DNA from: Macrostomum lignano
Lineage: Eukaryota
Length of the DNA: 64,000 nucleotides
Direction of reading: 5' to 3'
Assembly: GCA_002269645.1 (NCBI GenBank)
Contig: NIVC01000445.1
Location: 62,001 to 126,000, forward strand
This document shows positions 9,018 to 57,872 of this stretch, piece by piece. Made by a program: the position numbers and the translations under genes. The notes under the pieces were generated by a model. It was not told where the DNA came from and searched no databases. It saw only the letters and a program-made list of their open reading frames with translations. Each line of letters starts with the position of its first letter. Position 1 is the first letter of the stretch.

Positions 9018-10540
9018 CCTCTCTGATGAGACTCATAACTCTCTCTCTGATGAGACTCATAACTCTCTCTGATGAGACTCATAACTCTCTCTGATGAGAC
9101 TCATAACTCTCTCTGATGAGACTCATAACTCTCTCTGATGAGACTCATAACTCTCTCTCTGATGAGACTCATAACTCTCTCTCTGATGAGACTCATAACT
9201 CTCTCTGATGAGACTCATAACTCTCTCTGATGAGACTCATAACTCTCTCTGATGAGACTCATAACTCTCTCTCTGATGAGACTCATAACTCTCTCTCTGA
9301 TGAGACTCATAACTCTCTCTGATGAGACTCATAACTCTCTCTGATGAGACTCATTACTCTCTCTGATGAGACTCATAACTCTCTCTGATGAGACTCATAA
9401 CTCTCTCTGGTGAGACTCATAACTCTCTCTGATGAGACTCATAACTCTCTCTGATGAGACTCATAACTCTCTCTGATGAGACTCATAACTCTCTCTGATG
9501 AGACTCATAACTCTCTCTGGTGAGACTCATAACTCTCTCTGATGAGACTCATAACTCTCTCTGATGAGACTCATAACTCTCTCTGGTGAGACTCATAACT
9601 CTCTCTGGTGAGACTCATAACTCTCTCTGATGAGACTCATAACTCTCTCTCTGATGAGACTCATAACTCTCTCTCTGATGAGACTCATAACTCTCTCTGA
9701 TGAGACTCATAACTCTCTCTGATGAGACTCATAACTCTCTCTGGTAAGACTCATAACTCTCTCTGGTGAGACTCATAACTCTCTCTGGTGAGACTCATAA
9801 CTCTCTCTGGTGAGACTCATAACTCTCTCTGATGAGACTCATAACTCTCTCTGATGAGACTCATAACTCTCTCTGATGAGACTCATAACTCTCTCTGATG
9901 AGACTCATAACTCTCTCTGATGAGACTCATAACTCTCTCTGATGAGACTCATAACTCTCTCTGATGAGACTCATAACTCTCTCTGATGAGACTCATAACT
10001 CTCTCTGATGAGACTCATAACTCTCTCTCTGATGAGACTCATAACTCTCTCTGATGAGACTCATAACTCTCTCTGATGAGACTCATAACTCTCTCTGGTA
10101 AGACTCATAACTCTCTCTGGTGAGACTCATAACTCTCTCTGGTGAGACTCATAACTCTCTCTGGTGAGACTCATAACTCTCTCTGATGAGACTCATAACT
10201 CTCTCTGATGAGACTCATAACTCTCTCTGATGAGACTCATAACTCTCTCTGGTGAGACTCATAACTCTCTCTGGTGAGACTCATAACTCTCTCTGGTGAG
10301 ACTCATAACTCTCTCTGATGAGACTCATAACTCTCTCTGATGAGACTCATAACTCTCTCTGATGAGACTCATAACTCTCTCTGATGAGACTCATAACTCT
10401 CTCTGATGAGACTCATAACTCTCTCTGATGAGACTCATAACTCTCTCTGATGAGACTCATAACTCTCTCTGATGAGACTCATAACTCTCTCTGATGAGAC
10501 TCATAACTCTCTCTCTCTGATGAGACTCATAGCTCTCTCA
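9018..10540. repeat. 22-24 nt minisatellite (GATGAGACTCATAACTCTCTCT)n with palindromic core ATGAG-A-CTCAT
   Basis: Direct reading, ~68 units. Confidence 0.97.
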
Positions 10541-15902: not shown

Positions 15903-18423
15903 ATGACTCTGGGAAGCAGCGGAAGCAGCGGAGGTGCAGAGCTGCAGCAGCAGGTTAGCGCCAGCAAGCGATCATGGGACATCAACGACAGCAAGCTGCC
16001 ATTGGTAAGCGCTAAAACCTCCGCCTCACCGACCAATACGCAGTCAATTTCGCTAATTTAAGTACTCTTAATTTATACTAAAACCAAACCTCCCCATCGA
16101 ACAGCCCGACAGGCACGACAGCTTCCAGCTCTGGCCGAACGGACACTGCCGCTACGCCTATTGCCAGGACTCGGACGAGGCCAAACGGCACACCAGCGGC
16201 TGGGCGATGCGGAACACCAACAATCACAACGTGAGCATCTTGAAGAAGTCCTGCCTCGGTGTGCTGGTCTGCAGCCGCGGCTGTCTGGCCCCCACAGGCA
16301 ACCCGCTGGCCCTGCGGCCGGCCATCTGCGACAAGGCGAGAAGAAAACAGTGCGGTGAGCGACGGCTTCTGCTCTTGCATTCTTAATAGAGAAACGTACT
16401 ACTATGAGTACTGTATTCTACAAGCTATCTTTGGTATTCAATGCTAATTGAACAATCCCCAATCTATGATGCAGGCAAGCCGTGCCCCAACGCCAAATGC
16501 GATGGCACCCTGGTCCTGCAGGCCTGCCGGGGCCACTCCGGCTACCCGGTCACGCATTTCTGGCGCCACCTGAACGGCTGCGTCTATTTTCAAGCCAAGG
16601 GGGCGCACGACCACCCGGCGCCGGATCTGAAGCCGTCCGAAGAGTTTCGCAAAAACAATCGAAAGGCGACTAAAAGGCCGGCGGCCGCTGCTTTAGCGGT
16701 GAGTTCTTGAGTTATTTTTTTAACCCCCCCCTCTACTCATGTATGCCCGCCACTTCATCCGCTCCTTCACCCGCCCCTTCATCCGCCCTTCATACGCATT
16801 TCATCCACCTCTTCATCCGCCCTTTCATCTACCCACTATCTGCCCCTTCATCCGCCCCTTCATCCGCCCCTTCATCCGCCCCTTCACCCGCCCTTTCATC
16901 CACCTCATCACCCGCCCTTTCATCCACCTCATCATCTGTCCCTTCATCCGCCCTTCATACGCATTTCATCCACCTCTTCATCCGCCCTTTCATCTATCCA
17001 CTATCTGCCCCTTCATCCGCCCCTTCATTCGCCCCTTCATCCGCCCCTTCACCCGCCCTTTCATCCACGTCATCATCCGCCCTTTCATCCACCTCATCAT
17101 CTGTCCCTTCATCCGCCCTTCATACGCATTTCATCCACCTCTTCATCCGCCCTTTCATCTACCCACTATCTGCCCCTTCATCCGCCCCTTCATTCGCCCC
17201 TTCATCCGCCCCTTCACCCGCCCTTTCATCCACGTCATCATCCGCCCTTTCATCCACCTCATCATCTGTCCCCTTCATCCGCCCTTTCATCCGCCTCATC
17301 ATATGTCCCTTCATCCGCCTTTTCATTCTGTCCCTTCATCCGCCCTTTCATCCACCTCATCATCCGCCCCTTCATCCGCCCTTTCATCCACCTCATCATC
17401 CGCCCCTTCATCCGCCCTTTCATCCGCCCCCATCATCCGCCCCTTCTCCCGCCCCTTCATCCGCGTATACTTAACGCAAAACAACCCGCTATAAAATTGT
17501 CACTCCCTCCAATCCAAATATTCCAGCGCCGGCCAGCAGCGACGGTCCTTGACTGCACCGACCAGGTCGACGGTCCGCTGCCTCCGGCCAAGGCGCTCCG
17601 CCTGCAGGCATTCGTGGGGCCCAACTCGGACATGATGCCGCCCCCCTGCTGCTCGCCCTTCTCCTGCGCCTACCAGCCGCCGCACTCAGCCGTCGCCGCT
17701 GCCGCTGCCGCGGCCGCCTACAATCAGCAGCAGGAGCAGCAGACTCAGCACCAGCTGCATCATCAGCAGTGCCAGCTGCCCCAGCATCCGAATTTTTACA
17801 GCCCCGAATCGGCGCCTCATCGCGTACCTGCCCAATACTACAGCGACCTGCAGCAGCAGTCGGCGGCGGCGGCCTACCAACACCAGCATCATCAGCATCA
17901 TCACCAGCAGCAGCTGCATCATCCTGCAGCCGCTCACCACGCCGCCTACCAGCCTCTTCAGACAGTCCCGCCGGCCACCCCGCCGCCAGCCGTCCACGGC
18001 GGTTTCTCCCGGCACGCCTCGGACGCCATCAAGAGCAGCCCGGACTCGCCGCTGTGCAGCCCCGCTGGCATGCCGTTCGAGTCTGCAGCTCAGCAGGAGT
18101 CGTTCTTCCCGTTCTGGAGCCCGACGCATCAGATGTTCAGCCAGCAGCAGCAGCCGCACCAGCAGCTCCACCACCAGAGCCAGCATCAGCTACATCATCA
18201 TCATCAGCAGCAGCAGCAGTACCAGCATCACTATGAGCAGCAGCAGCAGCAGTGCTCTCAGTCACCCTCTATGACAGCAGCGGCAGCGGCAGCGGCAGCG
18301 GCGGCCTGGGCGAACAGTTGCCAGCCAGTTGCCAGCCAGTATTTCCAGCAGCAGCTGCATGACTACGGCAATCCGGCCACCTACCCGCCGCAGGCGCCGC
18401 CAGCAGTTCTTGGCCAGTCTTGA
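15903..18423 (+). CDS. gcm: GCM (glial cells missing) family transcription factor, paralogue A; 4 exons, ~490 aa
   Basis: Exons 15903-16004, 16105-16354, 16475-16698, 17527-18423, all GT-AG, phases 0/1/0, joining in frame (1473 nt). Translation has the GCM domain: [93 protein letters not shown] with all Zn ligands, then a Q/H/A-rich C-terminus. The start ATG is inferred. Confidence 0.95.
16740..17465. repeat. Pyrimidine-rich minisatellite (CCTTCATCCGCC core, ~165-nt higher-order period) in gcm-A intron 3
   Basis: CATACGCATT recurs at 16791, 16956 and 17121. Confidence 0.95.
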
Positions 18424-19121
18424 ACAAAATTGATTGATTTTGTTAATATCTCGAAGATCCAACATGGGATCAAGCAAAATCGGCTGTGATTCTTATTATT
18501 TCTATTGTACAGTTTTAATGCGATCTGCTTTGGCTAAAACTTCGAGTGTAAATACTATGTTGCGTGATGCGCAGTTTACATAATATCGCATTACATTTTA
18601 TTTGCTGTACATAAAATTGAGAACTGTCTCTATCGCGCCGCTAACTATAACAGCTATATTATACTTTAAATGCAACGCTCTGCTCTGTGTCTCAATTCTA
18701 ATAACTTCTAATCATCTGCAACAATCTGTCAATCAATCTTTAACTCAAACCAATCAGAATATTCTTGCACTCGTCAACTATCTTGTAAATAATTGTTTAT
18801 CTTTTTCAACTTATTGGCAAGCTGTAGTGCATGTCTCGCAATGCCGTCATTTTGCTTTCATTAGCTGCCGCCCTCTTAACTATACATGTAGTTACTAATT
18901 CCTTCGTAATTATTATACAAAAGTACATTAGCTATTTTTAAGAGTTCGATATTTTCTTTTCGAAGCGAGCCGCATGCGATGTGCAAATTAAAAAAACGAA
19001 GTGTTTTAATTGGTTTTGTCTTTTTAATGACGTCATTTGGTCAATGGAAAAGCTTTCGGATTGATAAAATATGATAAGGTATTAGAGTGAATGAGAGATA
19101 GTGTTATGATATTGAGTGACA

Positions 19122-19340
19122 TTTGAGATCTGGGAGTGACATTGAAAATCGGAGAGTGACATTTGAGATCTGGGAGTGACATTTGAGATCTGGGAGTGAC
19201 ATTTGAGATCTGGGAGTGACATTTGAGATCTGGGAGTGAAATTGGAAATCGGGGAGTGACATAGGAGATCCTGGAGTGACATTGGAAATCGGAGAGTGAT
19301 ATTTGAGAGCTGAGAGTGACATTTAAAAGCCGGGAGTGAC
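19122..19340. repeat. 20-nt minisatellite (GAGTGACATTTGAGATCTGG)n
   Basis: Direct reading, ~11 units. Confidence 0.93.
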
Positions 19341-20169
19341 AAGATTTGTGAAACTTAGTGAAACTTAGTGAAACTGCTCATTATCGTTCATTTATGCTAG
19401 CCCTGAGTTGCATATTAATTCTATAAATATGCTACACTCGTACACTGATGTCTATCAAGATTAAAACTGCAAGATCATGTATTTATTATTAATGATGATC
19501 ATATTATATATAAAATGCCCATATTTACATTTACTGAAGGTCAGTTGCGTTGTGTCCACTATAGTTATAACTCTCACGCACTGTCATCTATGAACAAGAT
19601 CGATTCTATATAATAATAACATGTCAGACGTTCATAAGGCAGATATCAATAGTAATTAAATACTTATATCACCTGCATTCGAACTAGCACTGGAGGTTGC
19701 GTCATCCCAGCGCATCCGAGGCCGCGGCTTTGGGGCAATAACTTGTAGGGGGTTGTTGCATCACTGTGAGCATATAGAAGCATACTTTTATGAGCAGAAT
19801 TTAGAAATATCGACTGAGGCCATAGACTATGAAAGAGAAAAGGTCTAAGAACAATTTCTAGAGTCACCACTCCCACAACTGCAGGCTGCAAGCAATTAGT
19901 CATGTTATTATTCAGACAGACATGTTGCAAACTTATTTCTGCCATATTTCAGAAACTCATAAATATCGAAGACTTGTATTGTGGCAAATGACTCTTCTTT
20001 TCCTTTTTGACAAGCGAAGAACAACAAACAGCATTTTTCTATAGTTAGTTTACAAGGAAAATATTTTCTTTAGAGAAACCATGCTTATGAAATGAATGTC
20101 GTCAACATAGACCCTATTCATTCATTTGTGTTGTCTTCCGTGTTGTAGGTTACCGAAACATGTTTCAAG

Positions 20170-20530
20170 TTGGGGATTTCAAAATGGGATTTTAGAATCG
20201 GATTTCGAGTTGGAGATGTCAGAATGGGATTTCAGAATGGGATTTCAGAATGGGATTTCAGAATGGGATTTCAGAATGGGATTTCAGTATGGGATTTCAG
20301 AATGGGATTTCAGAATCGGATTTCAGAATGGGATTTCAGTATGGGATTTCAGAATAGGATTTCAAAATGGGATTTCAGAATGGGATTTCAAAATGGGATT
20401 TCAGAATGGGATTTAAGTATGGGATTTCAAAATGGGATTTCAGAATGTGATTTAAGTATAGGATTTCAGAATGGGATTTCAGAGTGGGATTTCAGAATGG
20501 GATTTCAGTATGGGATTTCAAAATGGGATT
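20170..20530. repeat. 13-nt minisatellite (ATGGGATTTCAGA)n
   Basis: Direct reading. Confidence 0.95.
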
Positions 20531-21269
20531 ATGAGTTAGGGATTCCAGTTGAAGTAGACCCTACAAAGACGGCAAGACCCAGCATAGAATATTCATCAGT
20601 ATTCGAATGTTAAGCGACAATTCTGATAAATAATTAGCATTTTTTCGAAACAGAACCACACTATGCAGACAGAGACAAAGAGAGGGACAAAGGACCTGAA
20701 TAAAGAACAGGTCACCTGCAGAAATATTTGCTATAGCCTATACAGCCCAGCTATCCGTGTTTCGAGAAGGCAGACTTTAATAAGCATCTCTACAATGGGG
20801 ATGAAACTTCATCTAAAAGCATTATACAGCCCGTTCCCGCATCCACCAGCATGCTGGTGCTCAGGGTTTGGGGTGAGTCCGCAGACAGCCCGCAGGACTT
20901 CACCGAATCTGCCCACCCCCCCCCGTTTCCTGACCCAGACTCCAACATCCCATTCTCTCATTCTCATTTGTAAGCAGGTCTACCGAAAAAACTGCTAAGA
21001 TCTTCTTTTCTCTACAGAAGGGGGGGGGGCTCAGATCTAGATATCTGGAGAAAGGAACCCCCACTCCTACACTACCGAGTGCATGTGACGTACATGCGCA
21101 GATATTGTAGCGGGTAGAAATTTGGTTGCGTTCAAAAATTGTTTGAAATGTAAAATTATAGTATAATTATTTTGTCGGCCAAGTTTACCTAGTGCTCTCT
21201 GTTAAAGATTAACGTCTTTAAAAGCAGGTTTATCAACGATATTGCACCACAGACAGGTTTGCCTAAGCT

Positions 21270-21590
21270 GTACTTTGAGAGTGCGGGACGGGGGTGCGGG
21301 GGCGGGGGGTTTCACAAACTCGAAATTTCACAAGATCGAAATTTCACAAGGTCGAAATTTCACAACATTGAAAACTTTAGCAAGGGACTTCATAAGGTCG
21401 AAACTTCACAACGTAGAAAACGTAGAACCTTGTGAAATTTCGACCTTGTGAAGTTTCGACCCTGTGAAATAATTTACTTTTCGACGTTGTGAAATTTCGA
21501 CCTTGTGAAAGCACCCCCAGGGGCGGAGCCGGGTCCCCAACCACTACCATAGACTATTTGTTGTTTTCTAAGAGTGTCTAAATAAAGTAC
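21270..21590. mobile_element. Small foldback/MITE-like element with inverted arms built from a 16-nt subrepeat
   Basis: 21311-21415 carries tandem AAATTTCACAAGGTCG; 21428-21511 carries its reverse complement CGACCTTGTGAAATTT. G-rich and C-rich flanks; outer CTGTACTTT (21269) and AAAGTACAG (~21583) are inverted. Confidence 0.5.
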
Positions 21591-22249
21591 AGTATTTATT
21601 TTTATGGCAGTCAATCGGGTCTTTGGCCATAGGCAGTTCAATTCAGATTCAATCCATGGTTTAATTTTGCATAATCTGCTTCTAGCTCGTAGTTCATCTA
21701 ATTCACACAAGACCAAAATGATAAAAACTTTTTTTTTGATTGAGAAATCGCCTCCGTAAGTCCTGTGGGCGCCCTCATATTTTCTGCAGATGAAGGCTTC
21801 AAAATCCTGTTTTGCAACCGCAGTCACTCCTATGCACCCCAATATCGGTTTGGGGCTTAGAGAACGGGACCGTGGCTTGGAGAATGACAAAGGAAAAATA
21901 TATTCTTCATGCGGGACTAGAGAAAAAACCGAAAGAAACTCTAATTTTGCTTGGAATCTGTTTAGAATCTGAAAAATTCTTATCCAAAACTTCAGCTTCT
22001 TCGAGGCCAGGATGAGGGAGGGAGAGAGCCAGAGAGGAGACTCAAAAGCTTGTTGCTAGGAGCCCTTGGCGCGCTTCCTTAAATTATCCCGCATATAAAG
22101 ACACGAGTGTTGCTGTGAATCTTAAGAAATCTGTCTGTCTTTTAGCCGCAACAAAGGCAGGAGTGGGCAGCAGTGAATGTCCAGGCCAACCTTCTGTGGC
22201 GATCTTTAGGTAAAGAATTTAGAATTTGCTAAAACTGGACTAAGAGGGT

Positions 22250-23060
22250 GCCATGTACAATAGAGTGAGTGCCATGTAGAATGAGTGCCATGTAGAATGA
22301 GTGCCATGTAGAATGAGTGCCATGTAGAATGAGTGCCATGTAGAATGAGTGCCATGTAGAATGAGTGCCATGTAGAATGAGTGCCATGTAGAATGAGTGC
22401 CATGTAGAATGAGTGCCATGTAGAATGAGTGCCATGTAGAATGAGTGCCATGTAGAATGAGTGCCATGTAGAATGAGTGCCATGTAGAATGAGTGCCATG
22501 TAGAATGAGTGCCATGTAGAATGAGTGCCATGTAGAATGAGTTTCATGTAGAATGAGTGCCATGAGTTCCATATAGAATGAATGCCATGTAGAATGAGTG
22601 CCATGTAGAACGAGTGCCATGTAGAATGAGTGCCATGTAGAATGAGTGCCATGTAGAATGAGCGCCATGTAGAATGAGCGCCATGTAGAATGAATGCCAT
22701 GTAGAATGAGTGCCATGTAGAATGAGCGCCATGTAGAATGAGCGCCATGTAGAATGAGCGCCATGTAGAATGAGTGCCATGTAGAATGAGTGCCATGTAG
22801 AATGAGTGCCATGTAGAATGAGTGCCATGTAGAATGAGTGCCATGTAGAATGAGTGCCATGTAGAATGAGTGCCATGTAGAATGAGTGCCATGTAGAATG
22901 AGTGCCATGTAGAATGAGTGCCATGTAGAATGAGTGCCATGTAGAATGAATTTCATGTAGAATGAGTGCCATGTAGAATGAGTGCCATGTAGAATGAATT
23001 TCATGTAGAATGAGTGCCATGTAGAACAAGTGCCATGTAGAATGAGTGCCATGTAGAATG
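22250..23060. repeat. 16-nt minisatellite (AGAATGAGTGCCATGT)n
   Basis: Direct reading, ~50 units; explains ORFs 22206-23052. Confidence 0.97.
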
Positions 23061-23934
23061 GGCGCTGCTTAAAATGGAACAGGGCAGGGATAATAAAACT
23101 GGAATTAATGTCCTTTTTAGCTTTCCAAGTCCCAAAGGAATGAACACTAATCCTATTTTAATCACATGTTCCTCTGTTTCTGCAGTTCAGCAAAATCAAC
23201 AACTGCAGGGTGAATGAGCTATAGCGTTTGATTTATTTCATTTTTTGCAGCAGAATGACAACAGTGATGACAATAAATTTGCTCGAGATCGCTAAAAAGT
23301 GATAATTCAACACGGGGGTTGGATGGGGGTTGGCGGCACAAGCAGACTTGCGGGCAGCTTGTTGCAGTAAGGCTGAAAACAGATGGATTATCATCGGGAA
23401 CAGAATCCTCAAGCCCTCATTTATCCTGCACGATTCTGCCGGCACAATGATTCCATTGTTTTCATTTCGACCATATATAAATTGAAAGATGAAGTAAGAA
23501 GAGCCTCCAAGCCTTCGTGAGCAGTAAAACCCACCACCCATATTCAGAGGAATGCCTTGCAGATCACAACTATGTATTATCATTTTGACTGTTGATCCTC
23601 AGTGGATTTCAGAACTCCCCACCTCTCTTTCGCTTCACCGACCGATATTTTTTCCTGTCTTTCTCTCCAGCCTTGCCCCTCTGTATTGCAGTCTACGCAC
23701 ACACCGAAAATAATTTTATAAACTGTTGTTTAGTTGATGTTGCATTGTCACATTGTCTGTTCTGCCACATTCATTTAGTCGTGTCTTGGTTGTTTTCTTA
23801 AGTTCTAAGAAACAGCTATAGCTATTAACTGGTCTGGGAGTGAATTCTTGCTGACAGCAACAAAAACAGCGTCAGAAGAAGTAGTTTGTATAGTGTACAA
23901 AGACAATTTTACAAAGACTTCGGGGTGATCCCAA

Positions 23935-24360
23935 CACTGCGCGCTTATAGCACTGGGCGCTTATATAGCACTGCGCGCTTATATAGCACTGCGCGCCTAT
24001 AGCACTGCGCGCTTATATAGCACTGCGCGCCTATAACACTGCGCGCTCATATAACACTGCGCGCCTATAACACTGCGCGCTTATATAACACTGCGCGCTT
24101 ATATAGCACTGCGCGCTTGTATAACTCTACGCGCCTATAACACTAGGCGCTTATAACACTGTGCGCTCATATAACACTGCGCGCTTATATTACACTGCGC
24201 GCTTATATAGCACTGCGCGCTAATATAACACTGCGCGCTTATATAACACTGCGCGCTTATATAACACTGCGCGCTTATATAACACTGCGCGCTTATATAG
24301 CACTGCGCGCTTATATAACACTGCGCGCTTATATAACACTGCGCGCTTATATAACACTAG
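23935..24360. repeat. 18-nt minisatellite (CACTGCGCGCTTATATAG)n
   Basis: Direct reading, ~24 units. Confidence 0.95.
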
Positions 24361-25169
24361 GCTCTTCTGCTGCGTACCCTCTCCCATATGAGCAGGCACA
24401 ACCGATGGATTGGGTCAGCGAACAAAAAATTTGCTGGAAGCCGCCGCTCTGATGGCAATCTGATGGGGAATGTCAGACGGGAAGGCCGACGGTCCGCCAC
24501 GCGACATATTCCGATATCCCATCGCATTGCGCAATGGCGAAGGCCAGAGTTCTGATTTCGAACTGGAGTGAATGCAGCCTGAGGCGCTGACTTCTCAGCT
24601 CAACTGTCTTTCTCTTGTTCTCAAAACACGAAACAATATTTCTATGTAGGAGAAAGCTGACCCCCCAGCAGTTGTCCCAAATTTCTCCCAGCTCTGCAGG
24701 TGTCTCCTTTGCATGCGCGAGTCATCTGATTAACATGGCCGGACTTCCTGATTGATGAGGCGCACGAGTGAGGCTGGGCTGGGTGGAGGATGGGGGCGGG
24801 GAATTTCAAAGCATTTTCCAAAGTGGCCCATTGTAATTGCGCCACTGACGTCAGTTCGAACTCGAAGAACTCCCGAGCTTCTCAGCTTACATACACCTTA
24901 CTGAATACTGTTGGATTCCATATTGTCTGACAAATTAACTACATCAATCGAACCCAACCAACGTGTATTGAGAAATTGTGCAACAAGAGAGAACTACTGC
25001 TCAATGTTGTGCAAGGCCATGGTTAGTTATCTACATGTCAGGCAGTCTGACAGCGGCGTCCAGACTCTGAGATTCTGATCTACTAGTAAAAGCAAGCATC
25101 TATTCTACGTAGAAATATGCTAGGAAGTTTGACGCTCCTTTCATTTTCATTTTATAGCTGCCAGCCGCC

Positions 25170-26090
25170 AGATACTATAAATAGGGCGCACTAGTAGCGA
25201 CCCTAGTAGCGACCCCAGACACTATAAATAGGGCGCACTAGTTAGCGACCCTAGACACTATAAATAGGGCGCACTAGTAGCGACCCTAGTAGCGACCCCA
25301 GACACTATAAATAGGGCGCACTAGTTAGCGACCCTAGACACTATAAATAGGGCGCACTAGTTAGCGACCCCAGACACTATAAATAGGGCGCACTAGTTAG
25401 CGACCCTAGACACTATAAATAGGGCGCACTAGTAGCGACCCTAGTAGCGACCCCAGACACTATAAATAGGGCGCACTAGTAGCGACCCTAGACACTATAA
25501 ATAGGGCGCACTAGTTAGCGACCCTAGACACTATAAATAGGGCGCACTAGTTAGCGGTCCTAGACACTATAAAAAGGGCGCACTAGTAGCTGTCCTAGAC
25601 ACTATAAATAGGGCGCACTAGTAGCGACCCTAGACACTATAAATAGGGCGCACTAGTTAGCGACCCTAGACACTATAAATAGGGCGCACTGGTAGCGACC
25701 CTAGACACTATAAATAGGGCGCACTAGTTAGCGACCCTAGACACTATAAATAGGGCGCACTGGTAGCGACCCCAGATACTATAAATAGGGCGCACTAGTA
25801 GCGGTCCTAGACACTATAAATAGGGCGCACTAGTAGCGACCCCAGACACTATAAATAGGGCGCACTAGTAGCGGTCCTAGACACTACAAATAGAGCGCCC
25901 TAGTAGCGGTCCTAGACACTACAAATAGAGCGCACTAGTAGCGGTCCTAGACACTATAAATAGGGCGCACTAGTAGCGACCCCAGACACTATAAATAGGG
26001 CGCGCTAGTAGCGTTCCTAGACACTAATTAGAGCGCACTAGTAGCGGTCCTATTCCTAGACACTACAAATAGAGCGCACTAGTAGCGGCG
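25170..26090. repeat. 35-44 nt minisatellite (GACACTATAAATAGGGCGCACTAGTAGCGACCCTA)n
   Basis: Direct reading, ~25 units. Confidence 0.96.
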
Positions 26091-26509
26091 CCAGGTACAC
26101 TCAGTGAATTCTGTCGCAAAAATAAATATGGTCAAACAGTCACCTTCTGATAACGCACACAATAGTCTTCATTAAAAGTCGGATCCCCGCTCCCCAGTCC
26201 AGTTTCTAGGGTGCGTAAACAAAGTACAAAAAGCATCTTCAAGAATATCGGGCCAAAGTCGAAGTTGGAGTCACGAATTGTTGCAGAGTTCGGGGCAAGG
26301 AATCCCATGATTTATGGCAGTGCCAATCCGAGTCCAGGAAATCAGAGCAATTGCTTTCTGTCGGCTTCAATTTCGGCAGTATTTGGCAATTTTACTGCAC
26401 CGAGGCGTGACTTTCTTGAATGCCTGCTCCCCAATTTGCTAGTGCGGGGATGCGTGTGCCTTGGCATTTTTAATATCCCATCTCTGACTCCATCTCTGTG
26501 TCTCAGATT

Positions 26510-26650
26510 CTGAAATTTCAAATCTCTGACTCTCACATCTCTGACTCTCACATCTCTGAACTTTCACATCTCTGACTCTAACATCTCTGACTCTCACATC
26601 TCTGACTCTCACATCTCTGAACTTCACATCTCTGACTCTTACCCTCTGAC
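26510..26650. repeat. 15-nt minisatellite (TCTCTGACTCTCACA)n
   Basis: Direct reading. Confidence 0.9.
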
Positions 26651-28096
26651 TAACATTGTGCTTATTTTCCTTCAAACTTCAATAAAACTTCAGTCAGTTG
26701 TGAAAGATTTATTCGACTTTATTAAAATGAGACCAAGATTGTAGAAATCGGTTTATCTGTTCCGAAATTATCGATAATTCTGTGCAGATAGTAGGGTGTC
26801 TGGTGCTGGTACACCCAGGACCCATTTCGTATTTGGGGGAATGTCACCATCCATGTCTCCAGAGTTCCTATTTTTAAGAATCATGCGGGCTTAGTCTTTT
26901 AAATCCAAATATTTTAAGTTGATAAAGTTTTATAACAGCTAGCATGAATTGAAGGGATAAACGTTTCTAGTCCAGATGATTTAGATGTTGTCCATGTGCC
27001 AGCCGATCCCTAAAGCGTCTAATTTTCAAGTTTAATCAGTCGAGAAGCTTGTGATAGCTAATGCAATTGTTATTTTTTTAGTGTACGACTCTTGACTCGG
27101 CTCTTCTACCCTCTCATTATGCTGTTGAAGAGTGGAAAAAGAGGAACCTGCTTTTAAGAGGCAGGGTAACGTGTCAGGCGGACATTGTGGTGTGTGTGTG
27201 CAGATGGAGAAGTCAGCCTCCTCTAAGTCTCAACCATGCGGTAATGCGCAGTGTAAAGTTGCCTCATCAGCGGACAAAAGCTTGGGCGCACGTGCTGGCG
27301 CCCCCCCCCATCCATATTTTGCTGCATAATTAATGCAGATAAAATAATTAGTGCCTGTATGAGTGTGTTAGGAGACCTGGCTGTGCAATGCAATGTGAGC
27401 CATGCCATATTAGTCAAACTACGAGTATTTGGCCAACAGCTCCAGTACCGATCAACAGATGAGGATTTTTGTCATCCAAAAAGCAGAATCTGCCAGCGGC
27501 GAAGTCTGAACAACAACGACAAAAGTTTCTATTTGTTGGCGCAAAGCATATCATTATATTGCAACAGTATTGGCACGTGGCTAACACATAAGTATGCAGG
27601 AACTTTATAGAGCGGCGAAGAAACTCACGAAAACTTCTGAACTGATGTGTGCTAAAATTTACCCAATAACAGAAGGTATATTCAATCACTTTGAGTTCAA
27701 CAGATCCCAGAACAATGCGTTTTCTGAGAATTTTTTGACGCTTTGAACAGTCACGGAATGGAACCAACGAGAGTCAGGTGGCGCGAGAGTCAAACACGTA
27801 GGTAAGGCTTGTGTGGTGCTGATTAGAACGCCTGTCGACTTGATTTGCAGATATTGTCAAAAGTTATATATAAAACTACAAAGTTTATCAAAAAATGGTA
27901 TGGTCACTGAGTTCGCTTCATGCGCCTGCGACTCTCCGTCCCGGATCGGGCTCTGAGAATATTGTTAGTCAGACAAGAGTAGGGGTTGGCCATCCTTTAT
28001 TGGTAGCCCAGCTGTTGATTACTTCTCGAGGCAATCCATCATTTCGATGTGTGTTTCCGTATGAAAGGCAAGGTGAAAAATTAACTGTCTCAGAGA

Positions 28097-31000
28097 TCAT
28101 CCCATGAACAGCGGTCGTGTCGGCGAAGTCCGGCCATAGAGGTGGTTGGCGGCCGGGCCGTGGCCATCGGCTTCCGCGTCGGCAATGAGGGGCAGCAAGA
28201 CGCTCGCACTGCTGATGCCGGGTGCGGCACTGCCTCCGGGATTTGCTTGGAACAGACCGTCTTGATAGTACTGCTGCTGCTGCTGCTGCTGATGTTGTTG
28301 ATGAAGCTGCGGACGCTGGATTGGGATCGGCTCCTCATCCTCTAGCTGAAACTGCTGCCTAGTCAGGTGCGGCCTGAGCTCCGCCAGCAACGCCGACTCT
28401 CCGTCCGAGTTATAAGTCGTTCCGCTGCCGCCGCCGTTGGACTGCCAGAAGGCGAAGAACGGATCGGCGAAGTCTGTCACTGGATCAACGATCGGTGGCG
28501 ACTCAGAAAGTGGCAACTGCTGCTGCTGCTGCTGGTGCTGCTGGTGCTGACGATGCAACAGCATCTGGTGGTACTGCTGGTGCTGCTGGTGCTGCTGGTG
28601 TTGCTGGTGCTGCTGGTGTTGCCCAGTCACTGCAGATGGCAGAGCGATTCTCTCGCCAATTTGCATTGGAGCTGGCAGCCGCTGTTGCTGCTGTTGCTGC
28701 TGATAATGATGATGAATCTCGTGCTGCTGATGCTGCAGCTGCTGATGGAGCTGGTGCTGCTCCAACTGCTCACGATGCTCAGCTGGCGCTGAAGCATAGA
28801 ATCCAACCGATGCTCCCAAGCCCGGATACGGAAGCATTCCGATGTACTGCTGCTGCTGCTGCTGCTGCCCGTGAGGTGCTGCCTCGGGTCCTCCGACGAA
28901 AGCCGCCGCCGCAACTACCGCGGCCGCCGCCGAAGCCACCGCCCCAGTTGAATCCGGCCGGTGAAGTAGCTGCTGCTGTAGGTGGCTCGCCTGACGCTGA
29001 GCCGTTGGTGCTGGGCGGCAGCGGCACTGGTCGATGTCGACGCGATGATATGGGCAAATTAGTGACTGATAATATTGATGATGCTGATGCTGCTGATAAT
29101 GGGCCTGCTGGTGGTTGATGGTTGATGGGGCTGTGGGCCTGCGCTTGATTTTCGCCTTCGGCTGTCGCTGTTTCTGTGGCTTCACGGCGTTCTTGACAAT
29201 CAGCTGCTGCTGTCTCTGTACCTGTTGATGCTGCGGCTGCTGTTGCTGTCTCTGTGGCTTCTTGGCCTTCTTAACAATCGGTTGTTGTTGTTGCGCAAAT
29301 TGATGCTGCACCTGCTCCCGCCGCTGAACCTAGAATAGGTTGCGAGTTCGATTCCTATCTCAAGGTAGGTAGAATCTCATGCGATCCTTTTCTCCCTGTC
29401 TCTTCCTGTCTCTCTCCCCGCCTTTCCCCTCTCCCTCCCTCAATGTCCCTGTCTCCCTCTTGCACTGTCAAAGTCTCCCACTCTCCCCTCACCACTGCGG
29501 GTACGCCGCTCTTCTTCAACAGTCTCATCCGCCTTCGAATGTCTTCAGCCGGCTTCAGATCCGGCGCCGGGTGGTCGTGTGCCCCCTTGGCTTGAAAATA
29601 GACGCAGCCGTTCAGGTGGCGCCAGAAATGCGTGACCGGGTAGCCGGAGTGGCCCCGGCAGGCCTGAAGGACCAGGGTGCCGTCGCATTTGGCGTTGGGG
29701 CACGGCTTGCCTGGAATGAAAGCAAAATCAGCGCGTCGGAAACGGGCTTTTGTGTCACAGCTGCCAGCTTTCCGCAGCTCATGATTGTCAATGTGTCCGG
29801 TTTGTGAAGTGTCCGGTTTGTGAAGTGTCCGGTTTATGAAGAGTTCGGTTTGTGAAGTGTCCGGTTTGTGAAGTGTCCGGTTTGTGAAGTGTCCGGTTTG
29901 TGAAGTGTCCGGTTTGTGAAGTGTCCGGTTTGTGAAGTGTCCGGTTTGTGAAGTGTCCGGTTTGTGAAGTGTCCGGTTTGTGAAGTGTCCGGTTTGTGAA
30001 GTGTCCGGTTTGCGAAGTGTCCGGTTTATGAAGTGTCCGGTTTGTGAAGTGTCCGGTTTGTGAAGTGTCCGGTTTATGAAGTGTCCGATTTGCGAAGTGT
30101 CCGGTATGTGAAGTGTCGGGTTCGTGAAGTTTGTGACCAGTTTCTGAAGTGACCAGTTTGTGAAGTGTCCGGTTTGTGAAGTGACCAGTTTGTGAAGTGT
30201 CCGGTTTGTGAAGTGACCAGTTTGTGAAGTGTCCGGTTTGTGAAGTGTCGGGTTTGTGAAGTTTGTGACCAGTTTCTGAAGTGACCAGTTTGTGAAGTGT
30301 CCGGTTTGTGAAGTGACCAGTTTGTGAAGTGTCCGGTTTGTGAAGTGCCCGGTTTGTGAAGTTTGTGACCAGTTTCTGAAGTGACCAGTTTGTGAAGTGT
30401 CCGGTTTGTGAAGTGACCAGTTTGTGAAGTGTCCGGTTTGTGAAGTGACCAGTTTGTGAAGTGTCCGGTTTGTGAAGTGTCCAGTTTGTGAAGTGTCCAG
30501 TTTGTGAAGTGTCCGGTTTGTGAAGTGTCCAGTTTGTGAAGTGTCCGGTTTGTGAAGTGTCCAGTTTGTGAAGTGTCCGGTTTGTGAAGTGCCCGGTTTG
30601 TGAAGTTTGTGACCAGTTTCTGAAGTGACCAGTTTGTGAAGTGTCCGGTTTGTGAAGTGACCAGTTTGTGAAGTGTCCGGTTTGTGAAGTGTCCAGTTTG
30701 TGAAGTTTCCAGTTTGTGAAGTGTCCAGTTCGTGAAGTGTCCGGTTTGTGAAGTGTCCGGTTTGTGAAGTGCCCGGTTTGTGAAGTTTGTGACCAGTTTC
30801 TGAAGTGACCAGTTTGTGAAGTGTCCGGTTTGTGAAGTGACCAGTTTGTGAAGTGTCCGGTTTGTGAAGTGACCAGTTTGTGAAGTGTCCAGTTTGTGAA
30901 GTGTCCGGTTTGTGAAGTGTCCAGTTTGTGAAGTGTCCAGTTTGTGAAGTGTCCGGTTTGTGAAGTGTCCAGTTTGTGAAGTGTCCGGTTTGTGAAGTGT

Positions 31001-34000
31001 CCAGTTTGTGAAGTGTCCGGTTTGTGAAGTGTCCGGTTTGTGAAGTGCCCGGTTTGTGAAGTTTGTGACCAGTTTCTGAAGTGACCAGTTTGTGAAGTGT
31101 CCGGTTTGTGAAGTGACCAGTTTGTGAAGTGTCCGGTTTGTGAAGTGACCAGTTTGTGAAGTGTCCAGTTTTTGAAGTGTCTGGTTTGTGAAGTGTCCGG
31201 TTTGTGAAGTGACCAGTTTGTGAAGTGTCTGGTTTGTGAAGCGTCTAATTTGTGAACCCATTCAACATTGCTGATAGACGGAAGCGTGAACTGACATGCA
31301 GAAACATTTTTCATCATCGGTGAAGCAGCAATGCTCTCACGACTGGAGCATTTCCCAGATCGGGGCCGGAAATGATTTTGTCAGCTCAAATTTCAACAAA
31401 ATTCCAGCCGGCTACCGGGCGGGGCCCCGGTGACTATCTGCTCACTCTAGAGGAGAGAAATGAGTGAGGAAAACTAAGAAGAAAATTGCCCCCAGCCGAG
31501 AAGATGGTGGGCGGGGCACCAGCGTTGCTGCTGAAGCGCAGTGCCATCCCGTTAGGCCAGGTAACCGGTAATTACCCTGCGTGATTCCCAAGCCCTTGCA
31601 GGCTCATAGGGGGAGGCGATAGATGGAGTGTCGAATCTCTCGCTGAAATGGGAACCAGCTAATTGGGGTCGCGCTGAAAGCTGAGGGGGGAGAGCAGATA
31701 TTGCAGCCATTCTTTCAGAGATAAACACTATCTATTGACTATTTTTGGGGGTTGCTAAGCTGTTGCCAGCTTGCGCGAACTCTATGAGTCCGTGAATTGG
31801 TTCATAGGCGGTTTGCTTGCGGCTACAGTTTCACGATTTGATGGAGCTGATAGCTTATGAAATTGGTGCTTAAGAAATGCTAGGTCTAGTCTATAGACTG
31901 GCTTCAAGATCTACTAGGTCTAGTCTATAGACTGGCTTTAAAATCTACTAGATCTAGTCTATAGACTGGCTTTAAGATCTACCAGATCTAGTCTAAAGAC
32001 TGGCTTCAAGATCTACTAGGTCTAGTCTATAGACTGGCTTCAAGATCTACTAGGTCTAGTCTATAGACTGGCTTCAAGATCTACTAGATCTATTCTAAAG
32101 ACTGGCTTCAAGATCTACTAGGTCTAGTCTAAAGACTGGCTTCAAGATCTACTAGGTCTAGTCTATAGACTGGCTTCAAGATCTACTAGATCTAGTCTAT
32201 AGACTGGCTTCAAGATCTACTAGATCTATTCTAAAGACTGGCTTCAAGATCTACTAGGTCTAGTCTATAGACTGGCTTCAATATCTACTAGGTCTAGTCT
32301 ATAGACTGGCTTCAAGATCTACTAGGTCTAGTCTATAGACTGGCTTCAAGATCTACTAGGTCTAGTCTATAGACTGGCTTCAAGATCTACTAGGTCTAGT
32401 CTATAGACTGGCTTCAAGATCTACTAGGTCTAGTCTATAGACTGGCTTCAAGATCTACTAGGTCTAGTCTATAGACTGGCTTTAAGATCTACTAGATCTA
32501 GTCTAAAGACTGGCTTCAAGATCTACTAGATCTATTCTAAAGACTGGCTTCAAGATCTACTAGGTCTAGTCTATAGACTGGCTTCAAGATCTACTAGGTC
32601 TAGTCTATAGACTGGCTTCAAGATCTACTAGATCTAGTCTATAGACTGGCTTCAAGATCTACTAGATCTAGTCCATAGTCTGGCCTCAAGATCTACGATT
32701 CTACTAGATCTAGTCTATACATAAAAGTCAATCAATTGAGATCTTTCTGTGTTGCCTAATATGAATATAAATATTTTTTTATATTTTAAACGTTCTAGTC
32801 ATCATGAACTAGCAAAATTTGTCATTTTTATCTAAATCGTTGTATTATCGAATCGGAACAACCGCAGATAGTCGAGACAGTGGGCCTATAAAACTTTCAT
32901 TTTTATAAAAAATCCTTGTAATTTTTGAATCGCTCTTTACTTGACCAGATTCGATCAATGTTGTGCGCTCTCCTGTACATCCAGCTGGTAGATGTGGTGC
33001 GCGCCATTTCAGATACAAATGAGTTGAAAATATTGTTAATGTTGTATTATTTTTTGAGAAAAGTGGTGGAAAATAGATTAGATCTAAAATGAATCAGATT
33101 TGGAACAGGAAACGAAAGAGAGCAGGGGAAGGGAGCGAAGATAGACGGGAAGGGAGCGCAATGGAGTGGGAAGGGAGTGGAGACAGACGGGAAGGGGTGG
33201 AATGGAGCGGGAAGGGAGCGGAGACAGACGGGAAGGGGTGGAATGGAGCGTGAAGGGAGCGGAGACAGACGGGAAGGGGTGGAATGGAGTGGGAAGGGAG
33301 CGGAGACAGACGGGAAGGGGTGGAATGGAGCGGGAAGGGAGCGGAGACAGACGGGAAGGGGTGGAATGGAGCGGGAAGGGAGCGGAGACAGACGGGAAGG
33401 GGTGGAATGGAGCGGGAAGGGAGCGGAGACAGACGGGAAGGGGTGGAATGGAGTGGGAAGGGAGTGGAGACAGACGGGAAGGGGTGGAATGGAGCGGGAA
33501 GGGAGCGGAGACAGACGGAAGGGGTGGAATGGAGCGGGAAGGGAGCGGAGACAGACGGGAAGGGGTGGAATGGAGCGGGAAGGGAGCGGAGACAGACGGG
33601 AAGGGGCGGAATGGAGCGGGAAGGGAGCGGAATGGAGCGGGAAGGGGCGGAATGGAGCGGGAAGGGCTGAAATGGAGTGGGAAGGGAGCGGAATGGAGTG
33701 GGAAGGGAGCGGAAGGGAGCGGGAAGGGGCGGAATGGAGCGGGGAGGGAGCGGAAGGGAGCGAGAAGGGAGCGAGAAGGGAGTGGAATGGAGCGAGAAGA
33801 GGCGGAATGGAGCGGGAAGGGGCGGAATGGAGCGGGAAGGGAGGCGGAAAGACAGAAGCCGTCGCTTACCGCACTGTTTTCTTCTCGCCTTGTCGCAGAT
33901 GGCCGGCCGCAGGGCCAGCGGGTTGCCGCTGGGGGCCAGACAGCCGCGGCTGCAGACCAGCACGCCGAGGCAGGACTTCTTCAAGATGCTCACATTGTGA

Positions 34001-34512
34001 TTGTTGGTGTTCCGCATCGCCCAGCCGCTGGTGTGCCGTTTGGCCTCGTCCTGCCTGCCTCCATAGGCGTAGCGGCAGGCTCCGTCTGGCCACAGCTGGA
34101 AGCTGTCGGGCACTTGCGGCTGGAGATTGCGCGGCAGTTAGGAGGAGACGACATGCAGTGTTTTTCAGCTTTGGTGCTTAATGCATGCGCTCTCTATTAT
34201 TATCTACTCGTATATATACACACACAGGCAGATGTCCACAGAGGGAAGCAGACGCACATGTGGGTATCTATCAATATATACCAACTACACTCAGACCGCA
34301 GCAGGCAAATACTTTCTCAGGGTCATACGGGCAGGCACAAGTGGAAGGGTCAGGCGGCGCGCTCTCACTGTTGGAAGCTGCGGGTCGTTGACGTCCCAGC
34401 GTCGGTCAGGGTCCAGCAGAGTCTGCAGTTTCTGCTTCTGCTTCAGTTGCTGTTGCTGCTCCTGCTCCTCCTGCTGCTCCAAAAGCAGCTGCTGCTTGCT
34501 GCTTGCAGGCAT
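28097..34512 (-). CDS. gcm: GCM family transcription factor, paralogue B; 4 exons, ~614 aa
   Basis: Exons 34512-34369, 34119-33870, 29710-29493, 29329-28097 (an in-frame acceptor 6 nt further in is also possible), GT-AG, phases 0/1/0, 1845 nt. WDVNDPQLP and the full GCM domain; poly-Q N-terminus; basic IVKKAKKP segment; poly-Q C-terminus. Intron 2 is 4159 nt. Confidence 0.95.
29800..31250. repeat. 16-nt minisatellite (GTCCGGTTTGTGAAGT)n in gcm-B intron 2
   Basis: Direct reading, ~90 units; explains the 509-aa and 395-aa ORFs. Confidence 0.97.
31880..32720. repeat. 34-nt minisatellite (CTACTAGGTCTAGTCTATAGACTGGCTTCAAGAT)n with 12-nt palindrome, gcm-B intron 2
   Basis: Direct reading, ~24 units; core AGTCTATAGACT. 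Confidence 0.97.
33130..33850. repeat. 41-nt G-rich minisatellite (GGGAAGGGAGCGGAGACAGACGGGAAGGGGTGGAATGGAGC)n, gcm-B intron 2
   Basis: Direct reading. Confidence 0.95.
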
Positions 34513-38099: not shown

Positions 38100-38415
38100 T
38101 TGAATCTAACCTGAATCTAACCTGAAACTAACCTGAATCTAACCTGAATCTAACCTGAATCTAACCTGAATCTAACCTGAATCTAACCTGAATCTAACCT
38201 GAATCTAACCTGAATCTAACCTGAATCTAACCTGAATCTAACCTGAACCTAACCTGAATCCAACCTGAATCTAACCTGAATCTAACCTGAATCCAACCTG
38301 AATCTAACCTGAATCTAACCTGAACCTAACCTGAATCCAACCTGAATCTTACCTGAATCTAACCTGAATCTTACCTGAATCTAACCTGAATCCAACCTGA
38401 ATCTAACCTGAATCT
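38100..38415. repeat. 11-nt repeat (AATCTAACCTG)n, copy 1
   Basis: Direct reading. Confidence 0.95.
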
Positions 38416-39039
38416 TCCGATTCCCAGAAATAATGGATCGCAGTGAAGCAGCCCCCTAATTACGAAGTGTAACACTTTGCTGCAGGCAGAATCGAAGCCT
38501 GACCGGAATCTGGGTCTCGTCATCAACATGGGGCCCACGCTGTGAGGTCACGTCACCACTTCTAATAATAGTTTAGCGATGAAAGAATCCCAACTTTTTT
38601 TATCCTCAAGCTTCTCAGCTCCTTTGTTTTCTTGCCTCTAATCCCAGTGCTTTATATCCCGATGCTTCTGATAGCTGCCGGCTAATATTATGACAACACG
38701 CGCTTTATAGGGCAGCGAGTAAATTGATGGTCTCCGCGACCCAGCAACTCCAGCTATATTGACTGAAAAAGTGAAAATATATTCTATTTTCAATTACACG
38801 GCTTCTGCTTCTAGGGGCAGGCTGAAGAAAAAAGCGAAATAATAGTCTTGGGCTCATTACAAATTCTGCGCGGGGCGTGTCTGCAGACAGTGAAGGCAGT
38901 TGTCTGCGGCTGGGACGCCGGCGGGGGCGGCAGGCAGCTCGTGTCTGAGGAGCCTTCGAATCTGAACAATTCAATGCCGACTAGCGGGCGTGACCTTGGC
39001 GCTTGGGAACAAGACGGTTGAGTGATTTACTGATAGCTA

Positions 39040-40130
<1,091 letters not shown>

Positions 40131-41397: not shown

Positions 41398-42670
<1,273 letters not shown>

Positions 42671-48919: not shown

Positions 48920-57872
<8,953 letters not shown>

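What the first reader, a model, noticed from the sequence alone, without database searches (positions are those of the whole stretch)
15903..34512. Inverted GCM gene pair whose DNA-binding domains appear homogenised by gene conversion
Seen: two gcm paralogues face each other with identical intron positions and phases and a 250-nt exon 2. From exon 2 codon 24 (16174 / 34050) to the donor there are 4 mismatches in 181 nt, and identity continues 17 nt into intron 2 (gtgagcgacggcttctg vs gtaagcgacggcttctg). Exon 3 has 3 mismatches in its first 161 nt. That is about 5 synonymous differences in ~113 codons. In contrast the first 23 codons of exon 2 differ at 9 residues, with 3 synonymous changes among the 14 shared residues. 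Exon 1, exon 4 and the remaining intron sequence are not alignable. Known: inverted repeats favour intrachromosomal gene conversion, and Drosophila gcm/gcm2 are also a linked pair. Inference: an old duplication in which conversion keeps DNA specificity identical while promoters and activation domains diverge.
Basis: partly seen in the sequence, partly recalled or inferred. Interest (0 to 1): 0.75.

Follow-up and report, generated by a model that had tools for sequence, protein, structure and literature searches.

The report
Flatworm GCM gene pair, converted domains
Two neighbouring, oppositely oriented GCM transcription-factor genes of the flatworm Macrostomum lignano are unrelated in sequence almost everywhere, yet share a 98% identical DNA-binding-domain core; this is a clear but ordinary case of one gene copy overwriting part of the other (gene conversion).

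Summary
Two convergent four-exon GCM genes are present: A on the + strand (15903-18423, 490 aa) and B on the - strand (34512-28097, 614 aa). Introns 1 and 2 sit at the same positions and phases.

From exon 2 codon 24 to exon 3 codon 137 there are 7 mismatches in 343 nt (dS 0.07). The alignable flanks have dS of 0.33 to above 2. Introns, exon 4 and the up/downstream flanks show no similarity above shuffled controls.

Codon bias cannot explain the identity: 105 of 110 codons are identical against 50-68 expected. Protein constraint cannot either: A differs from B at 1 of 45 core columns that vary among other animals, against 28 of 45 in the flanks. Identity also runs 22 nt into intron 2. Interparalogue gene conversion is therefore well supported.

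- The organism is Macrostomum lignano, not a fly; UniProt fragments match both genes exactly.
- The homogenised region is two exon-confined tracts. Intron 2 between them is unrelated (120 nt versus 4159 nt).
- Exon 1's last 13 codons do align.

No orthologues from other Macrostomum species were available, so the cross-species tree test could not be run. Whether selection maintains the identity is untested. This is a new example of a known process, of modest interest.

The parts
15903..18423 (+). Gene A, a GCM-domain transcription factor of 490 aa. CDS exons: 15903-16004, 16105-16354, 16475-16698, 17527-18423.
   Evidence: Clean GT-AG model. Pfam GCM E 2e-64 over residues 39-176. UniProt M. lignano fragments P0143 (118/119 identical) and P0121 match it.
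28097..34512 (-). Gene B, a GCM-domain transcription factor of 614 aa. CDS exons: 34512-34369, 34119-33870, 29710-29493, 29329-28097.
   Evidence: Clean GT-AG model. Pfam GCM E 4e-64 over residues 53-190. UniProt M. lignano A0A1I8GP91 (P0002) matches exons 2-4 exactly outside a frameshifted stretch, including the exon 3/4 junction.
16173..16376 (+). Converted tract 1, arm in gene A. It covers exon 2 from codon 24 (third base of codon 23) to the donor, plus the first 22 nt of intron 2.
   Evidence: Inverted repeat I25 at 97%. 4 mismatches in 181 exon nt. 20 of 22 intron nt match.
33849..34051 (-). Converted tract 1, arm in gene B. It covers the exon 2 3' part plus the first 21 nt of intron 2. 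A CT-rich tandem array starts immediately after it.
16475..16635 (+). Converted tract 2, arm in gene A: the first 161 nt of exon 3, up to codon 137 of exon 2+3.
   Evidence: 3 mismatches in 161 nt. BLAST 16472-16649 versus 29713-29536 at 96%.
29550..29710 (-). Converted tract 2, arm in gene B: the first 161 nt of exon 3.
16105..16172 (+). Unconverted 5' part of exon 2 in gene A (partner in B: 34119-34052). Codons 1-19 are 81% identical. Codons 20-23 differ at 10 of 12 nt and form the sharp 5' boundary of tract 1.
   Evidence: dS 0.33-0.45.
16355..16474 (+). Intron 2 of gene A, 120 nt. It is unrelated to B's intron 2 beyond its first 22 nt.
   Evidence: Local alignment score does not exceed shuffled controls.
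29711..33869 (-). Intron 2 of gene B, 4159 nt. 72% of it consists of three tandem arrays: 29793-31256, 31880-32696 and 33126-33849.
16747..17464 (+). CT-rich minisatellite filling intron 3 of gene A. The unit is 12 nt (CCGCCCCTTCAT) with a 165-nt higher-order period.
18424..28096 (.). Spacer of 9.7 kb between the two stop codons. The genes converge on it. It contains several minisatellite arrays and no recognisable gene.

Best explanation
The window is from the flatworm Macrostomum lignano. It carries two GCM-domain transcription-factor genes in convergent (inverted) orientation. They descend from a duplication that is much older than the similarity of their DNA-binding cores.

Non-allelic homologous recombination between the inverted copies has overwritten one copy with the other. 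This is interparalogue gene conversion. It covers most of the GCM domain: residues 58-171 of A and 72-185 of B.

In the genome the homogenised region forms two exon-confined tracts, of about 200 nt and about 161 nt. The intron between them is completely different in the two genes (120 nt versus 4.2 kb of minisatellites). The most likely reason is that conversion can only start and travel where homology survives. Tracts therefore stop at the intron heterology on the inner side, and at already-diverged coding sequence on the outer side.

**Shown:**
- the mosaic pattern;
- the synonymous-site contrast between core and flanks;
- the spill-over of identity into non-coding sequence;
- the exclusion of codon bias and of protein constraint as explanations.

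**Inferred:**
- the recombination mechanism itself;
- that there were two or more events rather than one discontinuous event;
- that the consequence is two factors with the same DNA specificity but different N-terminal ends, C-terminal halves and regulatory DNA. Whether that outcome is selected or incidental is unknown.
For: **Gene models and domain.** (mouse GCM1 structure 1ODH, E 9e-57).

**Organism.** P0143, P0121 and P0002 are M. lignano UniProt entries identical to A or B outside frameshift artefacts.

**Mosaic pattern.**
- The core has 7 mismatches in 343 nt.
- The preceding 68 nt have 21 mismatches; the following 57 nt have 37.
- dS is 0.071 in the core against 0.33-0.64 and above 2 in the flanks.
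- Synonymous-only Fisher test p = 2.5e-4; change-point permutation p of about 5e-4.

**Controls.**
- Codon bias: 105 of 110 identical codons against 50-68 expected; 0 of 200,000 simulations reached it.
- Intron 2's first 22 nt are shared, well beyond the splice consensus. All other non-coding sequence is at shuffle level.
- The exon 4 proteins are unrelated (E = 4).
- Scaled to other animals, A-B distance in the core is 0.009 against 0.29 to outgroups. In the flanks, A-B distance is 68-97% of the outgroup distance.
- These tracts are the only non-tandem repeats in the window.

**Consistent but weak.** GC3 is 0.87 in the core against 0.76 and 0.67 in the rest of the two genes, as GC-biased conversion would give.
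Against: - No orthologues from other Macrostomum species were available, so the classic phylogenetic incongruence test is missing.
- Only two sequences were compared, so the direction and number of events cannot be determined.
- The flank samples are small (24 informative codons).
- A single conversion tract should have homogenised intron 2, so two events, or one discontinuous event, must be assumed.
- The higher GC3 of the core could simply reflect the conserved domain.
- The core dS of 0.07 shows that the last homogenisation is not very recent.
Confidence: 0.85

Rival explanations
1. The pair is a young inverted duplication. Its flanks (exon 1, exon 4, introns, regulatory DNA) diverged unusually fast, while the domain core stayed similar.
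For: M. lignano has many recent duplicates and a very repeat-rich, fast-changing genome (PMC5730564). The low-complexity Q/H/A-rich tails evolve quickly. Exon 2 codons 1-19 are still 81% identical.
Against: Neutral sequence should be as similar as the core's synonymous sites. It is not. Introns 1 and 3, and 600 nt upstream and downstream, are at shuffle level, while the core is 98% identical. Flank dS is 5 to over 30 times the core dS. Boundaries are abrupt, for example 10 of 12 nt differ immediately before a 343-nt stretch at 98%.
Confidence: 0.04
2. The core was homogenised by a spliced cDNA (RNA-templated conversion). In the mRNA the tract is one continuous 343-nt stretch, while the intron between the two parts is untouched.
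For: The two tracts abut intron 2 on both sides. They have equal divergence (dS 0.062 and 0.085). Intron 2 is unrelated in between. At exon 3 the identity starts within 3 nt of the acceptor.
Against: Identity continues 22 nt into intron 2, including at least 10 nt beyond any donor consensus. A spliced template would not carry that sequence. cDNA-templated repair usually removes the recipient's intron, yet both genes keep intron 2.
Confidence: 0.05
3. The identity is held by selection on the nucleotide sequence itself, through extreme codon bias, exonic splicing signals, RNA structure or antisense pairing between the convergent genes. No recombination is involved.
For: The core has high GC3 (0.87). 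The GCM domain is highly conserved across animals.
Against: Codon usage predicts at most about 68 identical codons of 110, against 105 observed. A equals B at 44 of 45 core positions that vary freely among other animals. The shared intron sequence is not explained. No Rfam family is found in the window.
Confidence: 0.03
4. It is an assembly or polishing artefact. Reads from one paralogue were used to correct the other, producing false homogenisation.
For: M. lignano assemblies are redundant and hard to polish. UniProt models from an older assembly carry frameshifts in these genes.
Against: Independent UniProt models show the same mosaic and keep the paralogue-specific Thr/Ser difference inside the core. 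P0143 has APTGNP with A-type flanks. P0002 has APSGNP with B-type flanks. Seven differences survive in the core. Polishing cannot turn a 30-50% diverged sequence into a 98% identical one.
Confidence: 0.03

Closest known systems
Interparalogue (ectopic) gene conversion between linked inverted duplicates. Textbook examples recalled from memory, not tested here: the Drosophila Hsp70Aa/Ab inverted pair, primate Y-chromosome palindrome arms, and globin and RHD/RHCE exon-limited tracts.
   Same: Inverted orientation at kilobase distance. A sharply bounded tract of near-identity, including at synonymous sites, inside otherwise diverged paralogues. Tracts of a few hundred nt. Raised GC3 in the tract.
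   Different: Here the tract is confined to two exons of a DNA-binding domain and is interrupted by a completely heterologous intron. There is no population or cross-species evidence yet.
Drosophila gcm / gcm2 (glide/glide2) linked paralogue pair
   Same: Two linked GCM-domain factors with similar DNA-binding domains and unrelated C-terminal halves. The protein sizes are also similar, from memory (about 500 and 600 aa).
   Different: The phylum is different (Platyhelminthes). Fly GCM domains are only about 60% identical to these. In the 10-sequence alignment, A and B are each other's closest relatives in every alignable segment. The pair is therefore most likely an independent duplication. No paper reporting conversion between fly gcm genes was found.
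GCM domain of mouse GCM1 bound to DNA (PDB 1ODH)
   Same: It aligns over residues 3-160 of the query at E 9e-57. The invariant Cys/His columns are kept.
   Different: Both flatworm copies share lineage-specific residues in the variable loops, for example [20 protein letters not shown] and HLNGCVY.

Membership tests
GCM-domain transcription factors (Pfam PF03615) | GCM domain match above Pfam's gathering score | tested here: met
   A scores 216 bits and B 215 bits against a cut-off of 25. Both match profile positions 2-139 of 140.
GCM-domain transcription factors (Pfam PF03615) | Sequence similarity to a solved GCM DNA-binding domain, with the invariant Cys/His columns retained | tested here: met
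   1ODH matches at E 9e-57. The Cys and His columns that are invariant across all 10 aligned sequences are present in A and B. Which of them bind zinc was not checked.
GCM-domain transcription factors (Pfam PF03615) | Binding to the GCM DNA motif and activation of transcription | not testable with these tools
   Needs EMSA or reporter assays.
Interparalogue gene conversion / concerted evolution | A sharply bounded high-identity tract inside otherwise diverged homologous genes | tested here: met
   The 343-nt core is 98.0% identical. Adjacent coding flanks are 69% and 35% identical. The change-point test gives p of about 5e-4.
Interparalogue gene conversion / concerted evolution | Homogenisation of synonymous sites beyond what codon bias gives | tested here: met
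   dS is 0.071 against 0.33 to above 2. 105 of 110 codons are identical against 50-68 expected.
Interparalogue gene conversion / concerted evolution | Identity extends into non-coding DNA | tested here: met
   20 of 22 nt match at the start of intron 2. The score is 32 against a shuffle maximum of 24. This applies only at that one boundary.
Interparalogue gene conversion / concerted evolution | Phylogenetic incongruence: the tract groups by species, the flanks group by paralogue | not testable with these tools
   No GCM sequence from another Macrostomum species was found in two protein searches. Within the genome, A and B are closest to each other in all segments relative to the third paralogue P0223.
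Interparalogue gene conversion / concerted evolution | GC enrichment of the converted tract (GC-biased conversion) | tested here: inconclusive
   GC3 is 0.87 in the core against 0.76 and 0.67 elsewhere in the two genes. This is confounded by the conserved-domain codon usage.
Orthologues of Drosophila gcm and gcm2 | One-to-one relationship of A with gcm and of B with gcm2 | tested here: inconclusive
   Fly proteins are about 56-61% identical to A, as are GCMs of many other phyla. A and B are nearest to each other even in unconverted flanks. The flanks are too short for a real tree. The organism is a flatworm.

The most novel reading that the evidence does not exclude
The two inverted exon tracts may act as a standing recombination substrate. 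On this reading, breaks arising in the polypyrimidine and other minisatellites that abut the converted exons repeatedly trigger exon-confined conversion. Occasional crossovers between the arms would invert the 13-17 kb between them. That would swap the two unrelated C-terminal halves, and intron 2, between the two promoters. The locus would then exist as interchangeable isomers. The array in B's intron 2 starts right where tract 1 ends. A's intron 3 is itself an array.
Probability: 0.1. Interest if true: 0.55.

Novelty: new member of a known kind. Interest (0 to 1): 0.3.

Why it matters
**What it shows.** M. lignano, a regeneration and stem-cell model, has at least three GCM genes. Two of them encode essentially the same DNA-binding domain (113 of 114 residues). 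These two are attached to unrelated N-terminal ends, C-terminal halves and regulatory DNA.

**Practical consequences.**
- Any probe, RNAi trigger or guide aimed at the GCM domain will hit both genes.
- Tree-based orthology calls made on the domain alone will wrongly date the duplication as recent.
- The public protein models for both genes are fragmentary or frameshifted. The window gives complete four-exon models.

**For molecular evolution.** It is a clean, small example of exon-confined conversion across a fully heterologous intron. It does not introduce a new principle.

Tried and rejected
- **Cross-species test.** Two database searches found only M. lignano fragments and GCMs of other phyla at 72% identity or less.
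- **Source contig.** The M. lignano hits are UniRef-only with no contig, so no DNA for the third paralogue or for a second copy of the locus could be fetched.
- **Fly locus.** I first assumed a Drosophila locus because of the codon usage and the poly-Q tails. This was rejected when UniProt M. lignano entries matched exactly.
- **Larger inverted duplication or shared mobile element.** I looked for one around the genes and found none.
- **Remnants of A's intron 2 inside B's 4.2-kb intron 2.** None beyond the first 22 nt. This rejects a single continuous tract followed by insertions.
- **Shared motifs in the exon 4 products.** No significant similarity.
- **Other genes and RNAs in the window.** Pfam on ten long ORFs and Rfam on the whole window found nothing.
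- **Literature.** No paper on gcm in Macrostomum, or on conversion between gcm paralogues.
Full report
**1. What is there**

Reading both strands gave two complete four-exon genes with canonical GT-AG junctions.
- Gene A is on the + strand: exons 15903-16004, 16105-16354, 16475-16698 and 17527-18423, giving 490 aa.
- Gene B is on the - strand: exons 34512-34369, 34119-33870, 29710-29493 and 29329-28097, giving 614 aa.

The genes converge, with 9.7 kb between their stop codons. Exon 2 is 250 nt in both. Introns 1 and 2 are at identical positions and phases. Intron 3 has the same phase and lies within two codons of the same position.

Both proteins match Pfam GCM (PF03615) at E about 1e-64. The domain matches the solved mouse GCM1 DNA-binding domain 1ODH at E 9e-57.

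**2. Organism**

The best database hits to the GCM domain from insects, molluscs, annelids and other phyla are only 55-68% identical. Three UniProt entries of the flatworm Macrostomum lignano match the window exactly, apart from prediction or frameshift artefacts:
- P0143 (A0A1I8G6F2) equals gene A exons 1-2 (118 of 119 residues) and then reads into intron 2.
- P0121 (A0A1I8FHY8) is gene A with frameshifts.
- P0002 (A0A1I8GP91) equals gene B exons 2-4, including my exon 3/4 junction.

The window is therefore M. lignano, not a fly. A fourth entry, P0223 (A0A1I8HR09), is a third and much more distant GCM paralogue at 54% identity.

The repeat landscape fits this species.
- 36% of the window is in tandem arrays.
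- It puts simple and tandem repeats at 15% of the genome.
- It also reports extensive redundancy from extra chromosomes (PMC5730564).

**3.

I concatenated exons 2 and 3 in frame.
- Positions 69-411 (codons 24-137) have 7 mismatches in 343 nt, or 98.0% identity.
- Four of these fall in the 181 nt of exon 2 and three in the first 161 nt of exon 3.
- Five are synonymous. One codon (ACA/AGC) gives Thr/Ser.
- The 68 nt before the tract have 21 mismatches. Ten of these fall in the 12 nt of codons 20-23.
- The 57 nt after the tract have 37 mismatches.

The repeat finder reports the exon 2 arm independently (16173-16371 / 33853-34051, 97%). A self-BLAST shows that the two exon tracts are the only non-tandem self-similarity in the 64 kb.

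**4. Is it conversion?**

*Synonymous divergence.* Nei-Gojobori dS values are:

| Region | dS |
|---|---|
| Core, whole | 0.071 |
| Core, exon 2 part | 0.062 |
| Core, exon 3 part | 0.085 |
| Exon 2 codons 1-19 | 0.33 |
| Exon 2 codons 1-23 | 0.45 |
| Alignable last 13 codons of exon 1 | 0.64 |
| Exon 3 tail | 2.6 (saturated) |

I then counted only codons that encode the same degenerate amino acid. Five of 110 differ in the core, against 8 of 24 in the flanks (Fisher p = 2.5e-4). A two-breakpoint maximum chi-square test on that synonymous series gives a permutation p of about 5e-4.

*Codon bias.*
- With the codon usage of the rest of the two genes, 50 identical codons are expected.
- With the core's own usage, 68 are expected.
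- 105 are observed, and no simulation in 200,000 exceeded 89.

*Non-coding sequence.*
- The first 22 nt of intron 2 match at 20 positions with one gap.
- That is at least 10 nt beyond anything a donor consensus could explain.
- Intron 1, intron 3, the rest of intron 2, and 600 nt upstream and downstream score no better than shuffled sequence.

*C-terminal halves.* The exon 4 products have no detectable similarity (E = 4).

*Protein constraint.* I aligned A and B with seven GCM domains of other animals and with the third M. lignano paralogue.
- The core has 45 columns that vary among the other animals. A differs from B at only one of them.
- In the flanks, A differs from B at 28 of 45 such columns.
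- A-B distance in the core is 0.009, against 0.29 to the outgroups.
- In the flanks, A-B distance is 68-97% of the outgroup distance.

Constraint therefore cannot explain the identity.

**5. Anatomy of the tracts and likely mechanism**

The homogenised region is continuous in the mRNA but not in the genome.
- Intron 2 is 120 nt in A and 4159 nt in B.
- 72% of B's intron 2 consists of three minisatellite arrays.
- The two introns share only their first 22 nt.

A single DNA-templated tract would have made the introns alike. No remnant of A's intron is found in B's.

The most economical reading is exon-confined conversion. Strand exchange between the inverted copies is possible only where homology survives.
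- On the inner side, tracts end at the intron heterology.
- On the outer side, they end at already-diverged coding sequence: the patch at codons 20-23, and codon 138 onward.

The equal divergence of the two tracts fits either two events of similar age, one discontinuous event, or a steady state of recurrent conversion. These cannot be told apart with two sequences.

A spliced-cDNA template would explain the mRNA continuity. It is contradicted by the shared intron start and by the retention of intron 2 in both genes.

Exon 2 codons 1-19 are an intermediate shoulder at 81% identity and dS 0.33. This may be the true age of the duplication or an older tract.

GC3 is higher in the core (0.87) than in the rest of the genes (0.76 and 0.67). 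GC-biased conversion would give that, but the domain's own codon usage confounds it.

The direction of conversion is unknown.

**6. Artefact check**

Independent UniProt models from an older assembly show the same mosaic and preserve the paralogue-specific Thr/Ser difference inside the core. P0143 has APTGNP with A-type flanks. P0002 has APSGNP with B-type flanks. An assembly or polishing artefact is therefore unlikely.

**7. Comparison with what is known**

This is a standard outcome of non-allelic recombination between linked inverted duplicates. Crossovers between inverted copies invert rather than delete, so such pairs can persist and convert. This is established knowledge and was not tested here.

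The fly gcm/gcm2 pair is an analogy only. A and B are nearest to each other in every alignable segment, so the duplication is most likely independent of the fly one. The flanks are too short for a firm tree.

I found no paper on gcm genes in Macrostomum or on conversion between gcm paralogues.

**8. Verdict**

- The interpretation (an old duplicate with a converted DNA-binding core) is supported by several independent within-genome tests.
- Selective maintenance of identical specificity is untested.
- The cross-species test remains to be done.
- Novelty: a new member of a known kind. Interest is modest (0.3).

Noticed in passing
window 1-64000: 36% of the window lies in 33 separate minisatellite or microsatellite arrays with TRF score of at least 200. 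Examples are a 20-mer x97 at 5057-7007, a 22-mer x68 at 9019-10539, a 12-mer x91 at 44499-45593 (99% matches), a 17-mer x62 at 46119-47176 (99%) and a 16-mer x112 at 50498-52294. Each array has its own unit.
   Followed up: partly
window 38101-40130 and 40459-42480: A 2.0-kb composite block, made of an 11-mer array followed by a (GATA)n array, is directly duplicated at 99.2% identity and 2.36 kb spacing. This is far more similar than the GCM cores, so it is a very recent local duplication.
   Followed up: partly
window 16747-17464 (A intron 3) and 33126-33849 (B intron 2): Both genes carry a C/T-rich (sense-strand polypyrimidine) minisatellite in an intron next to a converted exon. B's array begins exactly where tract 1 ends. 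The two arrays share composition and a CCCTTC motif but are not alignable. Whether such arrays promote breaks and conversion is speculation.
   Followed up: partly
window 48920-50188, - strand: A GC-rich (57%) stretch with long minus-strand ORFs rich in Ala, Glu and Gln. One contains ...[36 protein letters not shown]...; another starts [20 protein letters not shown].... It is probably another gene. There is no Pfam hit.
   Followed up: partly
UniProt entries P0002, P0121, P0143 versus window genes A and B: The public M. lignano protein models for these genes are fragmentary. One reads into intron 2. Two carry frameshifted stretches. One is fused to an unrelated N-terminus. Two different entries for gene A suggest that the locus is present twice in the older assembly.
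   Followed up: partly
P0223 (UniProt A0A1I8HR09), not in the window: A third M. lignano GCM paralogue, 54% identical to A and B in the domain. It also starts with MTLG, like gene A. It was useful as an in-genome outgroup.
   Followed up: partly
window 16162-16173 / 34062-34051 (exon 2 codons 20-23): A four-codon patch differs at 10 of 12 nt (CQDS in A, GGRQ in B). It sits between an 81% identical shoulder and the 98% identical core. It could be a small replacement or indel pair that now marks, or sets, the 5' limit of conversion.
   Followed up: no
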